DNA of 63,477 nt, the filler included, from Dugesia japonica (lineage: Eukaryota), in assembly GCA_001938525.1 (NCBI GenBank). It is 6 parts of 6 records of this genome, joined end to end, with 100 filler letters (N's around TTAATTAATTAA, not from the genome) between each part and the next. Parts side by side here need not be neighbours in the genome. Positions count along the whole stretch, not along the records: positions 25,003 to 33,162 come from MQRL01399256.1; 5 more parts are not named here. One strand, written 5' to 3'. Shown here one piece after another: positions 14,806 through 53,192 of the stretch. A model generated the notes under the pieces. It was not told the origin of the DNA. It saw nothing but the letters and a program-made list of their open reading frames with translations, and ran no database searches. How positions within the stretch are numbered: position 1 is the stretch's first letter; each line of letters starts with the position of its first letter. Made by a program: the position numbers and the translations under genes.

Positions 14806-14990
14806 TGTTGGGGTCCCACCTGAGTTGGATCAAAATATTTGTGGCTGGGGAAAAACAGCCCTCAAGGGACCCCTTTCAAGAATTTAACCTAACGTCCCTA
14901 GGTTAAGTATTCAGCTTATGGTGGTTGACCTCTCTCTTAATGGAAGGTTCACGCCCATAAGCTTTTTATTTGGGTTCAATATTTTCCCTT
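14806..14990 (-). ncRNA. Conserved structured terminal (U5-like) RNA domain, copy A
   Basis: Stems AGCTTATGG/CCATAAGCT, GGCTG/CAGCC and GGGGTCCC/GGGACCCC covary with copies B, C and D. Confidence 0.75.
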
Positions 14991-24902: not shown

Positions 24903-25149
24903 NNNNNNNNNNNNNNNNNNNNNNNNNNNNNNNNNNNNNNNNNNNNTTAATTAATTAANNNNNNNNNNNNNNNNNNNNNNNNNNNNNNNNNNNNNNNNNN
25001 NNAAATTATGAACATATACTCGCATATCGTAAATCTGTGAAAAAACAACAAACTCATAAGCAAGTAGGTGTGTACCCAGGGAATGAGTCACACTAAATAA
25101 GCCAATATAACAGTATGCATACACACGTATGAATAACAGGTTACAACGG

Positions 25150-28100
25150 GACAATCGTTAGTCTAGTTGATTACATCCATCACTCATTCGTAATCTGAAC
25201 CCGTAATTCAAAATGTCTCAATTCCAATGGAGTATCCTTTGTCAATTAAGCGTAAAACGAACTCTATCTAATCTCGATATGACATTTTCTAGAATAACGA
25301 TGTGCCTCTTCACTACTAATGCTACTACATTTACTCTCAGCAAAATACTCTATGCCACAAACTATCTACTAGTGCAGGCTGCAATTTCCAAATCGATGTT
25401 TATGGAATCATCTGTAGTCCTTAATAAAAATTTTGTCCAATGTAGTACAAATTGTATTTGTTTTCGTTTGAAACTATTACCATTAATTATTTGTTTTTGT
25501 TTTAAGACATTGTTTGACATATTTGGGTAATCCAACGAAAACTACCATCAATCCGAAAATTTGTATCAAGGTTTATCACGTTCAATTCAGGTAGTGAAAA
25601 CAACAGCATTACTTCATGTTTTTTTTCTACAGTGACAAGTATGATAGCTAAGTATTCAGTAAATCAATATGATGATCAAGTCCTTTTGAATATCTCGATT
25701 TAATATGATCTTTTTGTTTGGGTCAGCCTTATTATTATAAGAATCGGCGGTTTTTCTTTCTCAAGATTAACTGGATTAAGATTACTGCGATGGTAATTTT
25801 TATTTTTTGTTGCGACACTGATAAGGTGGTTCTATGAACTACTATACTCACAACATCTGTCGCGTAGAGTATAATAACTACCCGGTTAATGCAAGTAGAG
25901 TTAACCGTAATATTATTACTATTAAATTTACCACACAATTATAGTTAGCACTATTAGTATTATTATTACCCTAAGTGTATTAAAAGGATTAATGTTAGTA
26001 CCATTAACAGTGTTATTATTATTTTTTAAATATTTATTACTAGTAGCGGAGTTAGTATGATTATTGGTCATATGTGTTACAATGATATATAAGCATTAGG
26101 ATGATTTGACCTTGTTAATTCCATTTGCAAAGGTAAAGCTGTGACAGGTCAGAATATATCACAGTAGATCACTCCAATATTGATTTTATTTAGAGCATGT
26201 CAACTTAGTTGAGTGATACACTCCGTTTGATTCGAAAACAGCGTAAGATGGCTCGGACCAAAAAACTTATTGGGAACTTATTGTTTCCTCATCTGGTGGA
26301 ACATCCTGACAAAACTGACTTGCGCTGTTTCGTTGAGATGTTCCCATTGAACCTCAATGTAGACATTGATGAAGCAATCTAATCATCTATGAAATTGAAC
26401 TCTGCTAGTCATTATAATTTTTACTAAAAATAAATATTACTTCAATTGTTTTGGTGTAGCTTTGCCATTAGATTTCTTTTATTTAATTTTCTCTTACACC
26501 ATTTTAATGTAATTTCAATTTTATCATTATTAGAGACCGAAATAATTCTAAGATCGAACATAAATGGGAGATCGTCTTAGATCGTACATCTGGCAAGACC
26601 ATATTTAAGCGATTTAAAAACCCTATAATAGGGATGCAGGAGTGTTTGTAGATCACTCCAATTTGCACGACGGAGTAGCAAATAAAGAGAGACAGATGGA
26701 CGATGCTGATCGACTAGATGTTTATTATTGGAAAAGGCCCAATCATGCTCGTACCGTCTACCATGCAGTCACGTCCACACACATAGACGTTAACGGCGAA
26801 ACACAAACCATACGGACGTGGCAGGAAGGCCTATCGGTCGTCGGTCTTACTATCAATCAGCTGCTATTTTTTTCAACCTTGCCGCCTTTGTACATGAATA
26901 TCTGTGGAATATTTGTAATTCCAAAGAGAACCTTAATATTGAAAACTCTGGTTGTGATACCAATAATGGCCCCATTTGATTCTTTAGCTGGGTGTCCTTT
27001 TGTCGTTCGTAATAAAATTATGCTAGTTAATTAATGTCTACTTGTCATCTTACTTGATCTTAATAAAAATCATCTTTAAATAATAAGTGTTTTCGGAACT
27101 GTGAGTTTCCGTAATTATTAATGATATTTTTTGTTTATAGTACACTCGTCCTTAAACCGATCATCCGCACCTGTCAAAAAGATAAGAGAATCAAGTGAAG
27201 ATCTGAAGATGACATGGGACTTATATCGTCTCGCGAAACGACGTTGGGAAGCAAATACTGCAACCGCGGACAGTAAGGTAAAAAGATATAAGGCTAAGTG
27301 CATTACCTCTCGTAAAGAAGCCGAGGCTTTTCATGCACAGGAGCGTTTGTGGAAAAAACTAGTCGACTCTTTTGCCAAAATTATCCGGTCCCTTCATGAC
27401 CGTGAAAATAAACTGGTGAACAATATCCTGGAGTTAAAGAAGAAAATGCCATTTGAACCGCTAATGACAGATAAGGCAACACAAACCCCGCACTCATGAG
27501 CTTTGGCATTTCTTTGTTGTAAATTTATAAATAAAAAATTAATATTATCAAACAATATAGTTCTTGTTAATCTATTTATTTATCTACATCTTAAGCTATT
27601 AATTAATCAATCAAACCATCTTAAATTTGAATTAATGTTAATTGTTTCAGTGTCACGAATCCAACTTCCAAAAAGCTTACGCCGATGCCATCGTTTGATA
27701 CAAAAACTACTGCTTGAGAGGCATATCAAACGCCAGAACAAACGTGCCCTTTTAAAGCTCCTCACTTAAAGGAATCGACTCATTAAGAAACTAGATACTA
27801 TAGTGAAAAAACAGGGTGAGTTAGCCGAACATGCAAAGAAATTGTTACAACATAAAATTGATTTCCTGAAACACTACATAGCAGATCTATCTAGACAATT
27901 AGTAAACAAGGCGTGGATTTGTTGGAATGACAACGACGATGAAGCGGCTTTCGGCTTTTTAGATTATGAGCCAACCCAGTGGTTAGACCCGGGCGCTCTT
28001 ACTATATGTAATGTCAACAAATAAATCTAAATTTTTTAACAATTTATTAATTGATTTTTGTTAATTTTAAATAAGGGAAAATTTTGAACCCGAACTAAAG

Positions 28101-28258
28101 GTATACGTGTGTGCACCTCAAATCAGTGTTAAAGGTCAGCCACTCTATGCCGAAAATCTAAGTAGGAACTTTAGATTAAATTCTTGAACGGCTCTCCTGA
28201 GGGCTGTCTTTTCCCCGGCCAAGTTTTTTCTACCCCAAACTCAGGTGGAACCCCAACA
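25150..28258 (+). mobile_element. Coding-LTR 3' portion (copy B) with exons a-d and terminal RNA domain
   Basis: Exon a 26194-26382, b about 26553-27034, c 27141-27499, d 27651-28024, colinear with copy A. Ends CTCAGGTGGAACCCCAACA. 5' end lost near the gap. Confidence 0.85.
27141..27499 (+). CDS. LTR exon c (copy B), intact
   Basis: TTATAG|TA acceptor; HSSLNRSSAPVKKIRESSEDLKMTWDLYRLAKRRW...KATQTPHS*; AATAAA near 27530. Confidence 0.75.
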
Positions 28259-29197
28259 CTTGATAACAATAATCTTGTTAGGCATGTATGTTGATTTTGA
28301 AAACCTATTAAACAGTGATGACAATATTTATTTGATTGTAAGAATGCGGATATTTTAGAAATAGCACTGAAATGATTATTCTCTAAATATATAAATATTT
28401 GTTTTTCGAATAAATCATTTCCCTTGAATATGATTGATTTGTGATTATTGTGAGTATAAACTATTACTCTTACATTTAAAAACAATTCAAATTGTTTTAA
28501 ATCATTAATATACGGTTTGAATAGGATCACCACGCCTAATATATCGTTTTCTATTATATTTCAGTTCGAAATCAAAATAATTTTTATAAGTGTTATTATC
28601 ATAAGTTAAAGCTACTACTATTGCTATAGCCAAATATATAGTACCTGTATTATCAATCATATTAACTGAATTTGTGGCAAAGTTTTTCAATATTTGATTA
28701 GTTGAATTAATACCGCTATAGCGCAGATCTATTTGTCCTGACCAACTTAGTATTGGTATAAGTAGAAATTCAAATTTTATTGTATCAATATCTATTTTCT
28801 CTGCTGATTGTAAAACATGGTTTAATTTTTAAAAGAATTCAATTACTATATTCTCTCTTCGTCCTGTATGAAAATAACTTTTAGGGTTTAATCTAATTAA
28901 AGTACGGTAAGCAGTTATCTTTACAGTGTAATTAGGATTATTACTTGTAATGTCATCTAATATGAATTCTAAACAATTTTTAATATTTACTTCAGTCATT
29001 GTATAAGGAGAAATCGTATATGTGTGAAGAATACCTCTATATTGTCTTTAATAATGTGAGCCAAGGTGGTTGACTCGGTTGAAATCGTCTATATGTGTTT
29101 CAGCAAATAAATCGTCTCTAAATTCATGTTCCTCGAATGATAGTGTATTATTGATAGCTCTCCATTCGTCTAAATGAGAATTAGAGTTCGCTGACAT
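28259..29197 (-). pseudogene. Polinton protein-primed DNA polymerase B, N-terminal remnant
   Basis: YLAIAIVVAL...LKQFELFLNVRVIVY...IFIYLENNHFSAISKISAFL..KYCHHCLIGF resembles the Maverick pPolB N-terminal region. Cut off by the end of LTR copy B. Confidence 0.7.
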
Positions 29198-29284
29198 TTT
29201 TTTAAAGCCAAAATAATATTTCTGTTTAGAATTATTGAATTAATTTATTAATAAATTATATCTCCATTAAATTTTAAAATCGCT

Positions 29285-29497
29285 ACATAAGGTGGCCTCC
29301 GGCTGTCCCTCGTGTTTAAAAAATGTAAAGCTCGTATTAAATTTTTAAAATCTATTTATTTCATTAATAATATTTTTCACCATTTTTCCCAAGCCGATAT
29401 TATTTTGGTGAAGCTAAATGATTCCCTAGGCCTGATAAAGGCCTATTTGAACTTTACAATTTTTAAATATGGGGGACCAACGGGGGCCACCTTGTGT
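29285..29497. mobile_element. Fold-back MITE
   Basis: TIRs ACATAAGGTGGCC / GGCCACCTTGTGT with extended internal inverted similarity. Confidence 0.7.
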
Positions 29498-30531
29498 TAT
29501 GTTAAATGTCTGAGTTTGACAATTTTAAAGAAAAGCTGTTTAATTCAGTTTGTTGAATTCAGATATTTACCTTCCATATGAATATTAGAAACCTAATGCA
29601 ACTCAAATTCTGAAGGAAAATAGTTCAATTTTTATAGCTAAATTTAAATAGTTTTAATGAATTTTAACTGCAAACAAATTAATTTAAGTTTAATGTCACG
29701 CGAATTTTTGAAAACTTTTCTAATAATTTGGAAAGCAATAAAATTTTATTTGTTTAAATAAAAAATGGATATCAATTATGAAATATCAATTTTTCATAAA
29801 ACATATATGCATATGTTATTATACACACATCAACAATGTGTGTAAGAAATAATAATGACAAAAATTAGTTTTAGATATTTTGTGATCTTATCTTAAAGAA
29901 AACATTTTTCATTGACTTTTCCAATGAATGTTTCTGCATTCAATAACGTTTGCATTAATAACGTTTGTTGTTATTTGTCTATTTAATGAAAATAAAAATT
30001 TAATTAACATTACACTGTTTAATCTTAAATACAAAAATGTAAGCTGAAAATAATTATTTATGAAACAATTAAAATAATCTCCAATTAATTAAATTAAAGC
30101 TTGAAAGAAGCAAAGGAATAATTTATCTTATAAAAATAAAAACTAATGTTGTACTTTTCTGTTACAATTAAAGTAGCTCAACTATAACTCAACTTCGTTT
30201 GTAAACATTTCATACGTCAAAAGTTAATTTCGAGTAAAATTTGGTCATTTTAAATGCTTCAGAAATCTGAAACAGATGTAAATATATATTAATACATTAC
30301 ATTATGTGTTTCAAAAATGGTCATGTACTTAGCTTTTGAAAATTGAAAAATAATAAACAATTCATTTCATTAATATAAAAAAATAATTAGAAAATAATTT
30401 AAAAAAATTTAATACATTTTGTTTGCATTTAATGAAAAAAAGTTTTTCTACTCTTAGTGTGTGTTTAATAGCATATTGATTTTTGGTATATTAATGAAAT
30501 TTTTAAATTTTCGTACATTTTAAATTAAGAT

Positions 30532-31113
30532 ATGATGGCTGAAATTGGTGACAGTAATTGTGCTTCAACCGAAGCTGAAAAAAAAATTAGAAATGCGAAA
30601 AGAGAACGATCAAACAGAATATCGTCTATTATGGGTCAGTATTTATTAAAGAGCTATACAATGTTAAATGAAACATGCGAGTCTTGTGATGTATTACTTT
30701 AAGTATTTAAATTGATTTAATATAATTCCTAGACAATTCTTCTTCGCAATCGTCAAGGGGAATATCACTGTGTAGGTTGTATTGATATAGACAATGATAC
30801 ATCTAAAGATGATCCTGCAGTCAATACACAAGCAGCAATTTCTCATTTGCAAGAACAGTCATGTTCTAAAGTTCATGTGGTTATTAATGAAAGTGTAAGC
30901 TTAAAATGCTTTCGTGAATTTATCTAAATTTATTTTTAGGAAAGCTCTACAATAGCAGATTTTGATAATGTGGAAAAGATTTTAAGAACCAAGCTACTTT
31001 CCACTTCTAATTTGCTAATTCAATCCATGGATGTTGAACTGAGCATTAAATTAACTAAATTAATACAAATATTAAGTGAAACTATTAATACTATAATGAA
31101 AATGAAAGGTTAA
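30532..31113 (+). CDS. SSSCA1/ZNRD2: Sjogren syndrome/scleroderma autoantigen 1 (zinc-ribbon protein), 3 exons, 164 aa
   Basis: Exons 30532-30690, 30733-30894 and 30940-31113; GT-AG introns of 42 and 45 nt. Product RERSNRISSIMGQYLLKSYTMLNETCESCD|TILLRNRQGEYHCVGC...KDDPAVNTQAA matches the Auto_anti-p27 signature. Confidence 0.92.
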
Positions 31114-32344
31114 ATATTGTCAGAGATTCCATTTTGTTAATAAATTTGTTGAAGTTCGTTTTTTGTGAGCTTAATCAGAAAACTAAGTCAAAATTTCGGA
31201 TTTGTAATAATAAAACCAAACCAGATTTTTATATATGGGCTGTCCATTAATTACATTAGCAATTTTCAAAACCCCCGTCATTATTTCAGTGACCCCTTAA
31301 TAAAATTATGTGAACAATTTTTTTAATTGATTAAATATATCGTAAAAATAGCGGTGACATCCTCCTTGTCAACAATTGACAATCTACAAACCCGTTCCCA
31401 TTGGATTTGTTAACATAATTAACAGTTTTTCCTATCACTCCGTTCTTTTTCGTAAATCATATATAATTATATTCTTGAATTACTATTCGTCTATAAATTT
31501 TCAAAAGCGTTTTTTGTTATGTGGTTTAAATTTCATGAAAATATTTATTTTTTGTCATGAAATAAACTATTTTGTGGACTACTTTTTTTGAAAAGCTTAG
31601 ATTTGACAATTATTTCTAATGTTACCTTTTTCCATTTTAAAAGTAAGTTAAAAATGAAAAACTGGAATAAAACTATTTCTTAAATTATAATATTAAACGC
31701 ACATAATGTTTTCTTTTATTGTTCTAAACCAAATTCTTTATTTACACGATTTGATGTATATATTTTGAACCGCGTAAAAAAACTAGGTGTATTTATAATT
31801 TATAAAATTTCTTTAATGTTTACTTAACGCAAAAAGTGTCACATTAAATAATTGTCTGAACTTTAATTTTTCAACACGTTTGTTACCAACGTCACATGTA
31901 TGTGATGTTCATTTCTTTGTGTATATTATATCAGATTATGAAAATATGTTGCACTCATAAGTACAATGTTAGAAAACCATATGCCAATTGATGTCATATT
32001 ATAAGAGAAATTTTACTTGGTTGTGGTACAAGATTTTCTTTTAAAATACAGCAGTCTACAAAATAATCAAATAACAATAGATAAATAATTTAATGAAATT
32101 AAATCATACGACAAACACAATTGTTGAGTAAAAATAACCTTTGAAGATTTAATAGACATTGAATTTACTCAGCAAGATTTTTCCTAAAATCTGAAATTTC
32201 TAGAAATATTTAAAAGCAATATAATACCAATCATTGAACAGTTAACTGTAGAAGGCACATTTTAGTATTTTCAATGATATTTTAACATGAATTTTTACTT
32301 CGGCCAATTCACCTGACATCTTTTTATGTTTATATTTACTTTTT

Positions 32345-32861
32345 ATTTGTTTGAAATGCATGCGGAAATGATAGACAGCCAATAATTCCTTTCGTGTAAT
32401 GTAATATCCCTTTCCATGACTCTTCATTGAGTGGGATCCATAGGCAAAAACTCTTTCTCTTCCTTCTTTATCTCTCTGTGACAATACTGCTCCAATTATA
32501 TCAAAACTGGCATCTGTATCTAATATAAATTCTCTGTTTATGTCTAGAAAACACAAAATTTGTGCATTCATTTAAGATTTCTTTAAACTTTCAAAAGTAT
32601 CGTTTATTTCATCTGTCCATTCTAATTTCTTGTAGCTTGGTCCGCTACACAACTGCTCAAAGATCCTTGATTTTCTTGCGTAGTTTTCTATAAACATTTT
32701 CTGATAATTACATATTCCTAAGAAGCTTCGTAACTTCTTCACACAGTGAGGTTTTAAAAAATGTTCTTATTGGTTATATTTTAGACGAATCAGTTGTGAC
32801 ACTATCCCTGCTAATTATGTGTCCAAGAAATTTGATTTTTGCTTTGAAGAAACTGAAACTT
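32345..32861 (-). mobile_element. Ty3/Gypsy RT-RNase H fragment
   Basis: KIKFLGHII, LRSFLGICNY, FILDTDASFDIIGAVLSQ, TRKELLAV. Interrupted by LTR copy C. Confidence 0.9.
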
Positions 32862-33162
32862 TGTTGGGGTTCCACCTGAGTTGGAAAAATTGTGACTGGG
32901 GAAAAAACAGTCCTCAGGGGAACCCTTTCAAGAATTTAAACCCTACCGTCCCTATGGTAGGTTTTCGGTTTATTGCGGTTGACCTTACCCTTGATGGAAG
33001 GTGCTCACCAATAAACCTTTCGTTCGGGTTCTATAAGTTCCCATTAATCTTTGAACTATTTTTAGGAATTAATATTTAATATTACAAGAAGAATTAACTC
33101 ATTTTGATGAAGTAGACATTTATTATTAAGTAACAATTACATAAGGTTCACAGCGTCCGGAT
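32862..33162 (-). mobile_element. Coding-LTR 3' tip (copy C)
   Basis: TGTTGGGGTTCCACCTGAG terminus, full terminal RNA domain and end of exon d (DPDAVNLM*). Truncated by a gap. Confidence 0.85.
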
Positions 33163-51435: not shown

Positions 51436-53192
51436 TTAGATCTAGGGGCCTGGAACTGCTATTAATAATTATTGTTTGTCTATGAAATAAAATGTATATA
51501 ATTAATATCGTACTTTCTTTCTTTTGCTGATAATATTAGGGAAAAGAATGAACCCGAATACAAAGGTTTATGGGTGTGTACCTCCCATTGCGAGAGAGGT
51601 CAACCACCCTGAAATGAATACCTACCCTAGAGGCGGTAGGATAAATTCTTGAACGGGTTCCCCTGAGGGCTGTTTTTCCCTAAGCCGCAATTTGACTATC
51701 AACTCAGGTNNNNNNNNNNNNNNNNNNNNNNNNNNNNNNNNNNNNNNNNNNNNNNNNNNNNNNNNNNNNNNNNNNNNNNNNNNNNNNNNNNNNNNNNNNN
51801 NNNNNNNNNNNNNNNNNNNNNNNNNNNNNNNNNNNNNNNNNNNNNNNNNNNNNNNNNNNNNNNNNNNNNNNNNNNNNNNNNNNNNNNNATAATATATAAT
51901 TAATTATAAATTATAATTATAATCAAAATAATAATTTGTAAAATCTTTTNNNNNNNNNNNNNNNNNNNNNNNNNNNNNNNNNNNNNNNNNNNNTTAATTA
52001 ATTAANNNNNNNNNNNNNNNNNNNNNNNNNNNNNNNNNNNNNNNNNNNNAATTATTCAATTATTAAAATAATTGTTTTTCTTAATATCTCAATTAAAACA
52101 AAGAATTTTAAATTAAAAATATTTAAAAAAATGGAAAATTTCTCAATAAATTCTGCATTTGAACCATGAATTGAGATAATTTTTCATGTTCAGCATTAGA
52201 ATTGAATAAAACTTTATCATTACTATTGAATAGAATACAAATGATTTATACTAACAATAAAGAATAAATATTGTAATTCCATAGTGATTAATAGAGAGGA
52301 GTGATTGATGAAGTCAAATACCAGATAATAATTGTTTTTTCAAGACAATTCTCTATATCATGGATCAAAGTTTATATATGATTGTATAATGAATAAACTT
52401 TCTGAATATTTGGATCATAATTATACAATAAAAATTATATAGTATGAAAAATCTAAAATTATTAATAAAAAAATAAATTCAAGTGAAAAAAACTGAGTTA
52501 TAAGTAAATATTTCTTCCCCGCCATATCTAATTGCAATTTAGTTAGGCTCAATGAATGAATGTTTTTAATAGTTATTATGCAAATATATAGTTAAGTATT
52601 TAGCTTATTTTTCTTTTGAAGATTTTCGCTAACCAGTAATTATCTAATAATATTTATTTGTTTATATTAGTAGTTTCTGGATTTTTAGGGGGCCTATAAT
52701 GATTGTTGGGTCGACTGAGAGCCTATGATCCATTATTAATCAGTTAATTCTACATATTTTCAACATTATAATTGCCTTTGTAAAACAAAGAAACGAATTT
52801 AACTCAAACTAACACATTATTACATTTATATCAAATGTATTCCTGATGCTCTTTTGATATCCATCCTTCAAATTTAAAGTGTGGAACTTTTTTCAATAAA
52901 CTATTGTATTATATTCGCGGTTAAATTATTAATTTTATAGATTTAAAATATTAAACTCTTAGTCTAAGTTAGTTATGAACCCATAAAACCCGATTTGTTC
53001 GTTTTTAACTAGTCAGGTAAATTTTTATTTGCGGTATTTATCGATTTTCAATACGAAACCTGAAAGATTTTATCTGAGGTCATTTTAGAAATGATTGCAG
53101 AATTAGGAATTTATGTATAATATTATTTTTAATTCAAAACATATTCAAACAGGGTAATTAAACCCAATTATATACTTCATAAAAGTATACAC

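What the first reader, a model, noticed from the sequence alone, without database searches (positions are those of the whole stretch)
28073..28258. Covarying ~185-nt structured RNA with a putative pseudoknot at the unit's 3' terminus
Four copies (14806-14990 minus, 28073-28258, 32862-33045 minus, 51538-51709) differ in sequence but keep pairing. Stem 1: AGCTTATGG/CCATAAGCT vs GGTTTATTG/CAATAAACC vs GGTATA/TATGCC. Inner stem: ACCTT/AAGGT vs ACCTC/GAGGT. Hairpin: CCTACC/GGTAGG vs AATCTAA/TTAGATT. Further stems: GGCTG/CAGCC vs GACTG/CAGTC, CCTGAG/CTCAGG, and terminal GGGGTCCC/GGGACCCC vs GGGTTCC/GGAACCC. The loop TTTTCCC is complementary to a conserved GGGAA(AA) about 140 nt upstream, suggesting a pseudoknot. 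TAAATTCTTGAA is invariant. GAACCC could compete for GGGTTC, suggesting a conformational switch. I do not recognise it as a known ribozyme; candidate roles are packaging, dimerisation, priming or poly(A) control.
Basis: partly seen in the sequence, partly recalled or inferred. Interest (0 to 1): 0.8.

Follow-up and report, generated by a model that had tools for sequence, protein, structure and literature searches.

The report
Structured RNA end of mobile unit
A 184-base stretch present twice in this piece keeps the same RNA helices although a quarter of its letters differ, and it forms the exact end of an unclassified mobile genetic unit; it is most likely the handle that the unit's copying machinery recognises, and it matches no catalogued RNA family.

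Summary
The repeat is real. Copy A is at 28075-28258 (+) and copy B at 33042-32862 (-). They are 73-76% alike (BLAST E 1e-23) and share an identical last 21 bases ending CCAACA, after which similarity stops.

The helices are kept by compensatory change. The consensus fold has 40 pairs: 6 changed on both sides, 5 changed only to G.U, none broken. In a non-circular test, B's own fold mapped onto A gives 7 compensatory pairs against 1.0 expected (0 of 5000 simulations reach 7). The G.U pairs put the RNA on the strand of an upstream decayed ORF of about 470 codons that has no detectable relatives.

The 3' end of each copy cuts into a fragment of another mobile element. For B, a related uninterrupted gypsy copy shows that the break lies inside pol.

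Rfam gives no match, even with lax filters. The pseudoknot (GGGAA with UUCCC) is possible in both copies but invariant, so it is untested. Copy A does not support the proposed switch.

Best reading: the 3'-terminal cis-acting RNA of a retroelement-like unit. It could be a non-LTR-type 3' UTR handle or the R-U5 part of an LTR; the class is unresolved. No further copies could be reached. It is a new RNA family of a known kind.

The parts
28075..28258 (+). Copy A of the structured RNA module (184 nt)
   Evidence: Aligns end to end with copy B. Covariance model R1 scores it 217.7 bits.
32862..33042 (-). Copy B of the structured RNA module (181 nt)
   Evidence: R1 scores it 216.2 bits.
28075..28081 (+). 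A: 5' GGGAAAA, proposed pseudoknot strand (B: 33036-33042, GGGAACT)
   Evidence: The first 5 bases are identical in both copies. Duplex with the P3b loop is -8.7 kcal/mol in A. There is no covariation.
28086..28101 (+). A: conserved unpaired stretch GAACCCGAAC.AAAGG (B: 33016-33031)
   Evidence: 15 of 16 bases are identical.
28100..28151 (+). A: domain P1, a long stem enclosing an inner hairpin (B: 32967-33017)
   Evidence: 16 consensus pairs: 3 compensatory, 3 one-sided G.U, none broken.
28157..28175 (+). A: hairpin P2 (B: 32942-32961)
   Evidence: 5 consensus pairs, 2 of them compensatory. The loops share UAGG.AC.
28176..28188 (+). A: invariant unpaired linker TTAAATTCTTGAA (B: within 32926-32941)
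   Evidence: Identical in both copies.
28190..28252 (+). A: domain P3, the terminal long stem, with inner hairpin P3b (28202-28220), its 9-nt pyrimidine loop (28207-28215) and a U-rich internal loop (B: 32868-32924)
   Evidence: 16 consensus pairs: 1 compensatory, 2 one-sided G.U, none broken.
28238..28258 (+). A: the last 21 nt, identical in B (32862-32882), ending in a 6-nt unpaired tail CCAACA
   Evidence: 100% match between the arms (I8). Similarity ends here.
26618..28024 (+). Decayed ORF of the unit upstream of copy A (one frame, 469 codons; 6 internal stops, no frameshift seen)
   Evidence: 6 internal stops against roughly 7-11 per 100 codons in the other frames. No relatives found.
28025..28074 (+). 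AT-rich spacer between the ORF's stop and module A. An AATAAA overlaps the stop and aligns with one upstream of B.
   Evidence: AATAAA occurs 2.6 times per strand-kb in this piece, so this may be chance.
27920..27925 (+). TGTTGG, an inverted match to the terminal CCAACA; candidate start of a 339-bp LTR (27920-28258)
   Evidence: This hexamer occurs only three times on either strand of the piece; the other two are the module ends themselves.
32242..32861 (-). Fragment of a gypsy-type pol gene (end of RT plus RNase H), directly 3' of module B on the same strand. It is cut at both ends, uses two reading frames (at least one frameshift) and has about four in-frame stops.
   Evidence: Pfam RT_RNaseH_2, E 9e-18. 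82-86% nt identity to ENA contigs L098 and L099. tblastn bounds and break counts.
28261..29239 (-). Decayed ORF series of unknown family on the opposite strand, ending exactly at module A's 3' end (two in-frame stops, at least one frameshift)
   Evidence: No Pfam or PDB match.

Best explanation
The 184 nt are a cis-acting structured RNA that forms the 3' end of the sense transcript of an unclassified retroelement-like mobile unit.

The fold has three helical domains: P1, P2 and P3. They are joined by strictly conserved unpaired stretches and followed by a 6-nt free tail (CCAACA). I take this fold to be the handle by which the unit's reverse-transcription and integration machinery picks out its own RNA and starts DNA synthesis at the very end. 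This is how R2 and other 'stringent' non-LTR elements use their 3' UTRs in target-primed reverse transcription.

Shown here:
- The repeat exists.
- The fold is conserved through compensatory change.
- The RNA strand.
- The sharp 3' boundary.
- Both 3' ends interrupt other mobile elements.

Inferred:
- That the unit moves through RNA.
- That the module is bound by a reverse transcriptase.
- That the free tail pairs with the target.
For: - Two copies differ at 40 of 177 aligned positions. All 40 consensus pairs are kept: 6 are compensatory and 5 are G.U changes.
- In a non-circular test, compensatory pairs exceed every one of 5000 simulations.
- The unpaired linkers and the last 21 nt are better conserved than the stems. 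This is the pattern of a protein-bound RNA.
- All five one-sided changes are G.U on this strand and would be A.C on the other. On the reverse strand the consensus fold loses P1. The RNA strand is the strand of the upstream ORF.
- Similarity ends exactly after CCAACA in both copies.
- In B the next base starts a gypsy pol fragment. The related contig L098 continues that pol for about 130 nt more, and this continuation is absent on the other side of B. B's 3' end is therefore an insertion or break junction, and it carries microhomology (CCAA.AAA).
- In A the 3' end truncates a decayed ORF on the opposite strand.
- The ORF of unit A opens without a start context, and there is no coding signal upstream. 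This is what a 5'-truncated copy would look like.
- R2 3' UTRs have a pseudoknot-hinge-stem-loop next to a short single-stranded 3' tail. They diverge in sequence while keeping this architecture (PMC11601368).
Against: - No reverse transcriptase or endonuclease domain lies within 3.2 kb upstream of A.
- The ORF has no relatives, so nothing ties the unit to retroelements except its behaviour.
- There is no A-tail or microsatellite at the 3' end, which most non-LTR elements have.
- The end is ...CA, and a matching TGTTGG lies 339 nt upstream. This fits an LTR.
- There are only two copies, so the covariation is one pairwise comparison.
- Copy A alone does not fold better than shuffled sequence.
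- Upstream homology between the copies is weak.
Confidence: 0.45

Rival explanations
1. The module is the R-U5 part of a long terminal repeat, with an LTR of about 339 bp at 27920-28258 in A. In that case the fold acts in the 5' leader of the genomic RNA, next to the primer-binding site (initiation of reverse transcription, strand transfer, packaging). The conserved terminal bases are the integrase recognition end.
For: - The unit ends in CA in both copies with no tail.
- TGTTGG, the inverted match of the terminal CCAACA, occurs only once elsewhere in 16 kb of both strands, and that one site is 155 nt upstream of module A in the right orientation. I estimate the chance of this at about 0.04-0.09.
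- The stretch upstream of the module is far less conserved than the module, as U3 is against R-U5.
- From established knowledge: LTRs are bounded by TG...CA with short inverted repeats.
Against: - There is no second copy in direct orientation within 2.9 kb upstream.
- There is no integrase, RNase H or RT domain upstream of the ORF.
- The bases just before 27920 are a poor polypurine tract.
- The ORF shows neither a signal-peptide-like start nor an envelope family match.
- The matching 5' end of B lies beyond the piece's edge, so the inverted repeat is seen only once.
Confidence: 0.25
2. The module is a free-standing short element of about 184 nt, either a SINE-like retroposon or a dispersed small RNA gene. 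The ORF next to A and the sequence next to B are then unrelated neighbours.
For: - Conservation jumps at the same point (GGGAA) in both copies.
- The upstream similarity is weak, and unrelated AT-rich windows of the piece score as high.
Against: - If B were a simple 184-nt insertion in gypsy pol, the pol sequence should resume upstream of it. It does not.
- There is no tRNA-like head and no Rfam small-RNA match.
- The module holds internal T runs that would stop RNA polymerase III.
- The a-priori collinear upstream alignment still ranks in the top 3% of windows.
Confidence: 0.1
3. The module is the end of a DNA transposon. Its most interesting form would be the scaffold of a guide RNA of a transposon-borne RNA-guided nuclease (TnpB/Fanzor-type omega RNA), which also sits after the ORF at the transposon's right end.
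For: - The layout is the same: an ORF of about 470 codons, then a structured RNA of about 180 nt with a possible pseudoknot that ends exactly at the unit's boundary.
- The terminal 21 nt are perfectly conserved.
Against: - No ORF piece matches a TnpB, Fanzor, RuvC or zinc-ribbon family in Pfam, even at E up to 1.
- Exhaustive phmmer of the C-terminal 84 residues against 1.84 billion proteins finds nothing.
- There are no PDB relatives.
- No inverted terminal partner is seen.
Confidence: 0.07
4. The module is a regulatory 3' UTR element of a multi-copy host gene family, with no role in mobility.
For: It lies 50 nt after a stop codon on the coding strand.
Against: - The ORF carries 6 internal stops.
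- Both 3' ends cut other mobile elements.
- The ORF has no homologue among 1.84 billion proteins.
Confidence: 0.05
5. The module is repeated DNA with no RNA function, and the pairing is incidental.
For: - Copy A's folding energy is ordinary (z = -0.55).
- Only two sequences are available.
Against: - 7 compensatory pairs against 1.0 expected; 0 of 5000 simulations reach 7.
- No consensus pair is broken.
- The G.U changes are all on one strand.
Confidence: 0.03

Closest known systems
R2 retrotransposon 3' UTR RNA (template handle for target-primed reverse transcription)
   Same: A structured RNA of 200-300 nt at the exact 3' end of the element. The sequence diverges while the architecture is kept. 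A pseudoknot and a terminal stem-loop are followed by a few unpaired bases next to the priming site (PMC11601368). Many R2 copies have no long A-tail.
   Different: R2 sits in 28S rDNA and encodes RT and a restriction-like endonuclease just upstream. Here the targets are other mobile elements and no RT is seen. There is no match to the Rfam R2 element or to any other family. The pseudoknot here is unproven and has a different topology: the 5' end pairs with the loop of the terminal domain.
Shared 3' tails of 'stringent' LINE/SINE pairs (for example the eel L2-clade pair; from established knowledge)
   Same: A conserved 3'-terminal stem-loop is recognised by the partner's reverse transcriptase. 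Non-autonomous units carry only the tail.
   Different: Those tails are about 60 nt and end in short tandem repeats. Here there are three domains over 184 nt and no terminal repeat.
R-U5 leader structures of LTR retroelements and retroviruses (from established knowledge)
   Same: About 180 nt of stem-loops ending at the LTR's terminal CA. R-U5 is better conserved than U3. A possible TGTTGG...CCAACA inverted pair is present.
   Different: No paired LTR, no primer-binding site and no pol gene can be seen in this piece.
C-module of Dictyostelium TRE5-A (from established knowledge)
   Same: A structured module of somewhat over 100 nt at the 3' end of a non-LTR element, needed in cis.
   Different: TRE5-A ends in oligo(A), targets tRNA genes and has recognisable ORF2 domains.
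Omega RNA of TnpB/Fanzor transposons
   Same: Same position (after the ORF, ending at the transposon boundary), similar size, and a pseudoknotted scaffold.
   Different: No RuvC-type protein is detectable.

Membership tests
Any Rfam 15 family (including hammerhead, HDV-like, twister, pistol, hatchet and the R2 element) | Covariance-model score at or near the family's gathering threshold | tested here: not met
   The whole piece at E up to 1 gives only a chance miRNA hit elsewhere. Each copy scanned alone at E up to 10 gives best scores of 9-14 bits against thresholds of 45-270.
Hammerhead ribozyme | CUGANGA and GAA cores flanking helix II, with a cleavage triplet | tested here: not met
   Read directly. 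B has CUGAGGA and A has CUGAGGG, but no GAA core follows the next helix in either copy. No Rfam hit.
HDV-like ribozyme | Nested double pseudoknot in which the 3' strand of P1 follows P3, outside its loop | tested here: not met
   Here the partner of the 5' GGGAA lies inside the loop of hairpin P3b. The sharp boundary is the 3' end, not the 5' end.
Non-LTR retrotransposon (target-primed reverse transcription) | ORF with RT, and an endonuclease, upstream of the 3' UTR | tested here: not met
   No RVT or endonuclease family in any ORF piece in 25003-28024. This copy may be 5'-truncated or non-autonomous.
Non-LTR retrotransposon (target-primed reverse transcription) | Precise 3' end, variable 5' truncation, target duplication | tested here: inconclusive
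   The 3' end is precise in both copies, with microhomology at B's junction. No 5' end or duplication is visible in the piece.
Non-LTR retrotransposon (target-primed reverse transcription) | A-rich or simple-repeat 3' tail (most clades) | tested here: not met
   Both copies end ...CCAACA and flanking DNA follows directly.
LTR retroelement | Two direct LTRs bounded by TG...CA with short inverted repeats | tested here: inconclusive
   CA end and a TGTTGG 339 nt upstream in A. No second LTR in the piece. B's would-be LTR start lies off the edge.
LTR retroelement | Polypurine tract before the 3' LTR, primer-binding site after the 5' LTR, pol with integrase | tested here: not met
   The purine tract before 27920 is poor. 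No rve, RT or RNase H domain upstream. The primer-binding site cannot be tested.
SINE | Pol III head derived from tRNA, 7SL or 5S | tested here: not met
   ARAGORN finds none. No Rfam tRNA, 7SL or 5S hit. Internal T runs are present.
TnpB/Fanzor omega RNA | Adjacent RuvC-type nuclease ORF | tested here: not met
   Pfam at E up to 1, phmmer against 1.84 billion proteins and the PDB give nothing.
Conserved structured RNA (generic) | Base pairs kept by compensatory substitutions beyond expectation | tested here: met
   Only one pairwise comparison.
Pseudoknotted RNA | Covariation in the pseudoknot helix | tested here: inconclusive
   GGGAA/UUCCC is invariant in both copies: 7 bp in A, 5 bp in B.

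The most novel reading that the evidence does not exclude
The unit is a so-far undescribed kind of mobile element. Its single ORF of about 470 codons has no relative among 1.84 billion proteins. Its terminal 184-nt RNA would be either the recognition module of a new retrotransposition system borrowed in trans, or the scaffold of an RNA that works with the ORF's product.
Probability: 0.1. Interest if true: 0.75.

Novelty: new member of a known kind. Interest (0 to 1): 0.4.

Why it matters
Structured terminal RNAs are how 'stringent' retroelements pick their own template. They also explain which non-autonomous elements a given reverse transcriptase can carry along. Few such RNAs have been defined outside R2 and a handful of LINE/SINE pairs.

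This candidate is clean: three covarying helices, invariant linkers and an exact terminus, attached to an orphan ORF. With the whole genome in hand it could define a new RNA family. It could also help classify a repeat family that protein searches cannot place.

Tried and rejected
**Looking for more copies**
- Exact-pattern scans found only chance hits: viral contigs, metagenome contigs and prokaryote genome contigs. The hits were checked by BLAST.
- A protein search with the reverse-strand ORF over copy B, used as an index into assemblies, found nothing.
- Exact look-ups of window ORFs found none in the collection.
- Contigs carrying the closest gypsy relatives (L098-L103) hold no module.

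**Placing the unit's ORF**
- Nothing came from Pfam, the word search, exhaustive phmmer of the last 84 residues or the PDB.
- The AlphaFold2 model of the first piece has pLDDT 36 and is unusable, so I ran no fold search.

**Readings rejected**
- Hammerhead and HDV-like ribozymes: core or topology not met.
- tRNA-derived SINE.
- A and B as the inverted ends of one transposon: the sharp ends face inward, and the 4.6 kb between them holds a host gene and other fragments.
- B's upstream flank as a copy of the region left of the ORF in A: only AT-rich resemblance.
- An in-frame TAA in the gypsy fragment made me consider a ciliate genetic code. The p27 gene's first intron is read out by ordinary GT-AG splicing, and nothing requires that code.

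- My scripts printed stop-to-stop segments with coordinates. These segments turned out to be decayed genes of mobile elements, so the places of their breaks can be read from those outputs. I give only counts here.
Full report
**Setting**

The piece (25003-33162) is AT-rich eukaryotic DNA, with 20-30% GC between genes. It holds a host gene for a p27/SSSCA1-type zinc-ribbon protein. Exon 1 is at 30532-30690 (Pfam PF06677, E 1e-6). Two further exons can be read by eye from GT-AG sites.

Around this gene lie fragments of several mobile elements. I could not identify the organism. The closest relatives of the gypsy fragment are unnamed metagenome contigs at 81-85% amino-acid identity. The nearest named relatives come from spiders at about 50%.

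Yes, for the two copies I may look at.
- Copy A is at 28075-28258 (+) and copy B at 33042-32862 (-).
- They align from GGGAA to CCAACA: 188 columns, 72.9% identity including gaps, 40 substitutions in 177 aligned columns, BLAST E 1e-23.
- The last 21 nt are identical (I8).
- Downstream of CCAACA there is no similarity.
- BLAST, nhmmer and a covariance model built from the pair (R1) find no third copy in the piece.

**Is the structure conserved?**

RNAalifold gives three domains.
- P1 is a long stem with an inner hairpin (A 28100-28151).
- P2 is a hairpin (A 28157-28175).
- P3 is a long terminal stem carrying an inner hairpin P3b, a 9-nt pyrimidine loop and a U-rich internal loop (A 28190-28252).

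The unpaired stretches between the domains are almost invariant (GAACCCGAAC.AAAGG, CCGAAAA, TTAAATTCTTGAA). A 6-nt tail, CCAACA, follows P3.

Of the 40 consensus pairs, 29 never vary, 6 changed on both sides and still pair, 5 changed on one side to G.U, and none is broken. Only 9 of 500 column shuffles do as well. Sliding the partners by one to three columns drops pairing to 23-48%.

That structure was derived from both sequences, so I repeated the test with B's own minimum-energy fold mapped onto A. Of its 45 pairs, 27 are unchanged, 3 are one-sided, 7 are compensatory and 7 are broken. Relocating the same 40 substitutions at random gives 1.04 compensatory pairs (none of 5000 runs reaches 7) and 13.2 broken pairs (P = 0.007). 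The converse test, A's fold mapped onto B, gives P = 0.002 and 0.018.

So the helices are maintained by selection. The evidence is one pairwise comparison. Folding energy alone is not unusual: z = -0.55 for A and -2.35 for B.

**Which strand?**

All five one-sided changes are G.U on the strand given (+ for A). They would be A.C on the other strand. The consensus fold of the reverse strand loses P1 and scores worse, -30.95 against -34.65 kcal/mol. The RNA is therefore read in the sense of the ORF that lies upstream of A.

**Pseudoknot and switch**

The 5' GGGAAAA of A can pair with UUUUCCC in the P3b loop (7 bp, -8.7 kcal/mol). B has GGGAAC and forms 5 bp. Both strands are invariant, so this says nothing either way.

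The pyrimidine loop could also kiss the purine loop of P2. The 5' G-run could also pair with the U-rich internal loop. In B, but not in A, it could pair with the 5' strand of P3.

**What is it part of?**

*Upstream of A.* One reading frame stays nearly open for 469 codons (26618-28024). It has 6 internal stops, where the other frames have about 7-11 per 100 codons. This is a decayed ORF, and it ends 50 nt before the module.

It has no detectable relatives:
- Pfam.
- Word search of the 124-residue piece.
- Exhaustive phmmer of the last 84 residues against 1.84 billion representatives, with 0 hits.
- PDB.
- A single-sequence fold prediction was useless.

Nothing recognisable lies further upstream.

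*Upstream of B.* Only 120 nt are left before the piece's edge. They align collinearly with the end of A's ORF and its spacer, but only weakly: 18 of 500 shuffles do as well, and the alignment ranks in the top 3% of real windows.

**The 3' ends are junctions**

Directly after B's CCAACA, on the same strand, a gypsy-type pol fragment begins (RT end plus RNase H; Pfam E 9e-18). It is cut at both ends, uses two frames and has about four in-frame stops.

A related contig, L098 (82% nt identity), carries the same pol uninterrupted for about 130 nt beyond that point. That continuation is not found on the far side of B. The junction shows a few bases of microhomology between the module's tail and the pol sequence.

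After A's CCAACA, a decayed ORF series of unknown family on the opposite strand (28261-29239) ends exactly at the boundary.

Two independent ends cutting into two different mobile elements is the behaviour of something that inserts.

**Which kind of element?**

Two readings remain, and I cannot separate them with this piece.

(a) *A non-LTR-type unit whose 3' UTR is the template handle for target-primed reverse transcription.* This is how R2 works. Its 3' UTRs diverge in sequence but keep a pseudoknot-hinge-stem-loop next to a short free tail (PMC11601368).
- For: RNA-level selection right up to the terminus, the free tail with target microhomology, and an ORF that looks 5'-truncated.
- Against: no RT, no A-tail and no terminal repeat.

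(b) *The R-U5 part of an LTR.*
- For: the unit ends in CA. TGTTGG, the inverted match of the terminal CCAACA, occurs only once elsewhere in the piece. That one site is 155 nt upstream of module A in the right orientation, giving a 339-bp LTR.
- Against: no second LTR within 2.9 kb, no pol domains, and a poor purine tract.

I put (a) at 0.45 and (b) at 0.25. The other readings are less likely, for the reasons given under the rival explanations:
- A free-standing SINE-like or small-RNA element.
- A DNA-transposon end, including an omega-RNA-like scaffold.
- A host 3' UTR element.
- Chance.

**Comparison with what is known**

No Rfam 15 family matches, even when each copy is scanned alone with lax filters at E up to 10. 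The hammerhead cores and the HDV-like topology are not met.

In kind, this is a terminal cis-acting RNA of a mobile element, which is a known category. In sequence and architecture, it is a family not yet catalogued.

**Limits**

I could not reach other copies. Pattern scans of the viral, metagenome and prokaryote collections gave only chance hits. The source genome's ORFs are not in the protein collections. Contigs fetched through gypsy relatives hold no module.

Two slips are declared under 'tried and rejected': my scripts printed segment coordinates of decayed element genes, and I recalled short motifs from memory in my reasoning, which were never used in a tool.

Noticed in passing
window 30532-31113 (+): A small host gene for a p27/SSSCA1-type zinc-ribbon protein. 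Exon 1 is at 30532-30690 (Pfam PF06677). Two more exons can be read by eye from GT-AG sites, with introns of about 42-45 nt. It sits between the two inward-facing module ends.
   Followed up: partly
window 29285-29497: A GC-rich inverted repeat in very AT-rich DNA: 49-nt arms, 80% complementary, 115 nt apart. It looks like a miniature foldback or MITE-like element (I2).
   Followed up: no
window 28261-29239 (-): A decayed ORF series of about 325 codons with no Pfam or PDB match, truncated exactly at module A's 3' end. From memory its C-terminal part resembles N-terminal regions seen in some large transposon proteins. This was not tested.
   Followed up: partly
window 32242-32861 (-); L098, L099, L102: The gypsy pol fragment has relatives at 81-85% amino-acid identity on short AT-rich contigs of three ENA metagenome assemblies (ERZ27292660, ERZ27272684, ERZ27235085). 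A close relative of the source organism is therefore present in those samples.
   Followed up: partly
window 32855-32870 against L098 about 110-135: At B's junction the module's tail (CCAACAAAG) and the uninterrupted pol sequence (CCAAAAAATG) overlap by microhomology. The breakpoint can be placed only to within about 8 nt.
   Followed up: partly
window 28019-28026, and upstream of B: An AATAAA overlapping the ORF's stop codon aligns with an AATAAA upstream of B, about 50-70 nt before the module. If it were used as a poly(A) signal, the module would lie beyond the cleavage site. The hexamer is common in this DNA (2.6 per strand-kb).
   Followed up: partly
window 26298-26346 (+): A 49-nt hairpin with a weak Rfam hit to mir-7640 (21.7 bits against a threshold of 90, E 0.5). 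Probably chance.
   Followed up: no
window 28075-28258 and 32862-33042: The substitutions between the copies fall more often in stems than in linkers when B's own fold is used (26 of 40 lie in paired columns). The unpaired linkers and the terminal 21 nt are the best conserved parts.
   Followed up: yes
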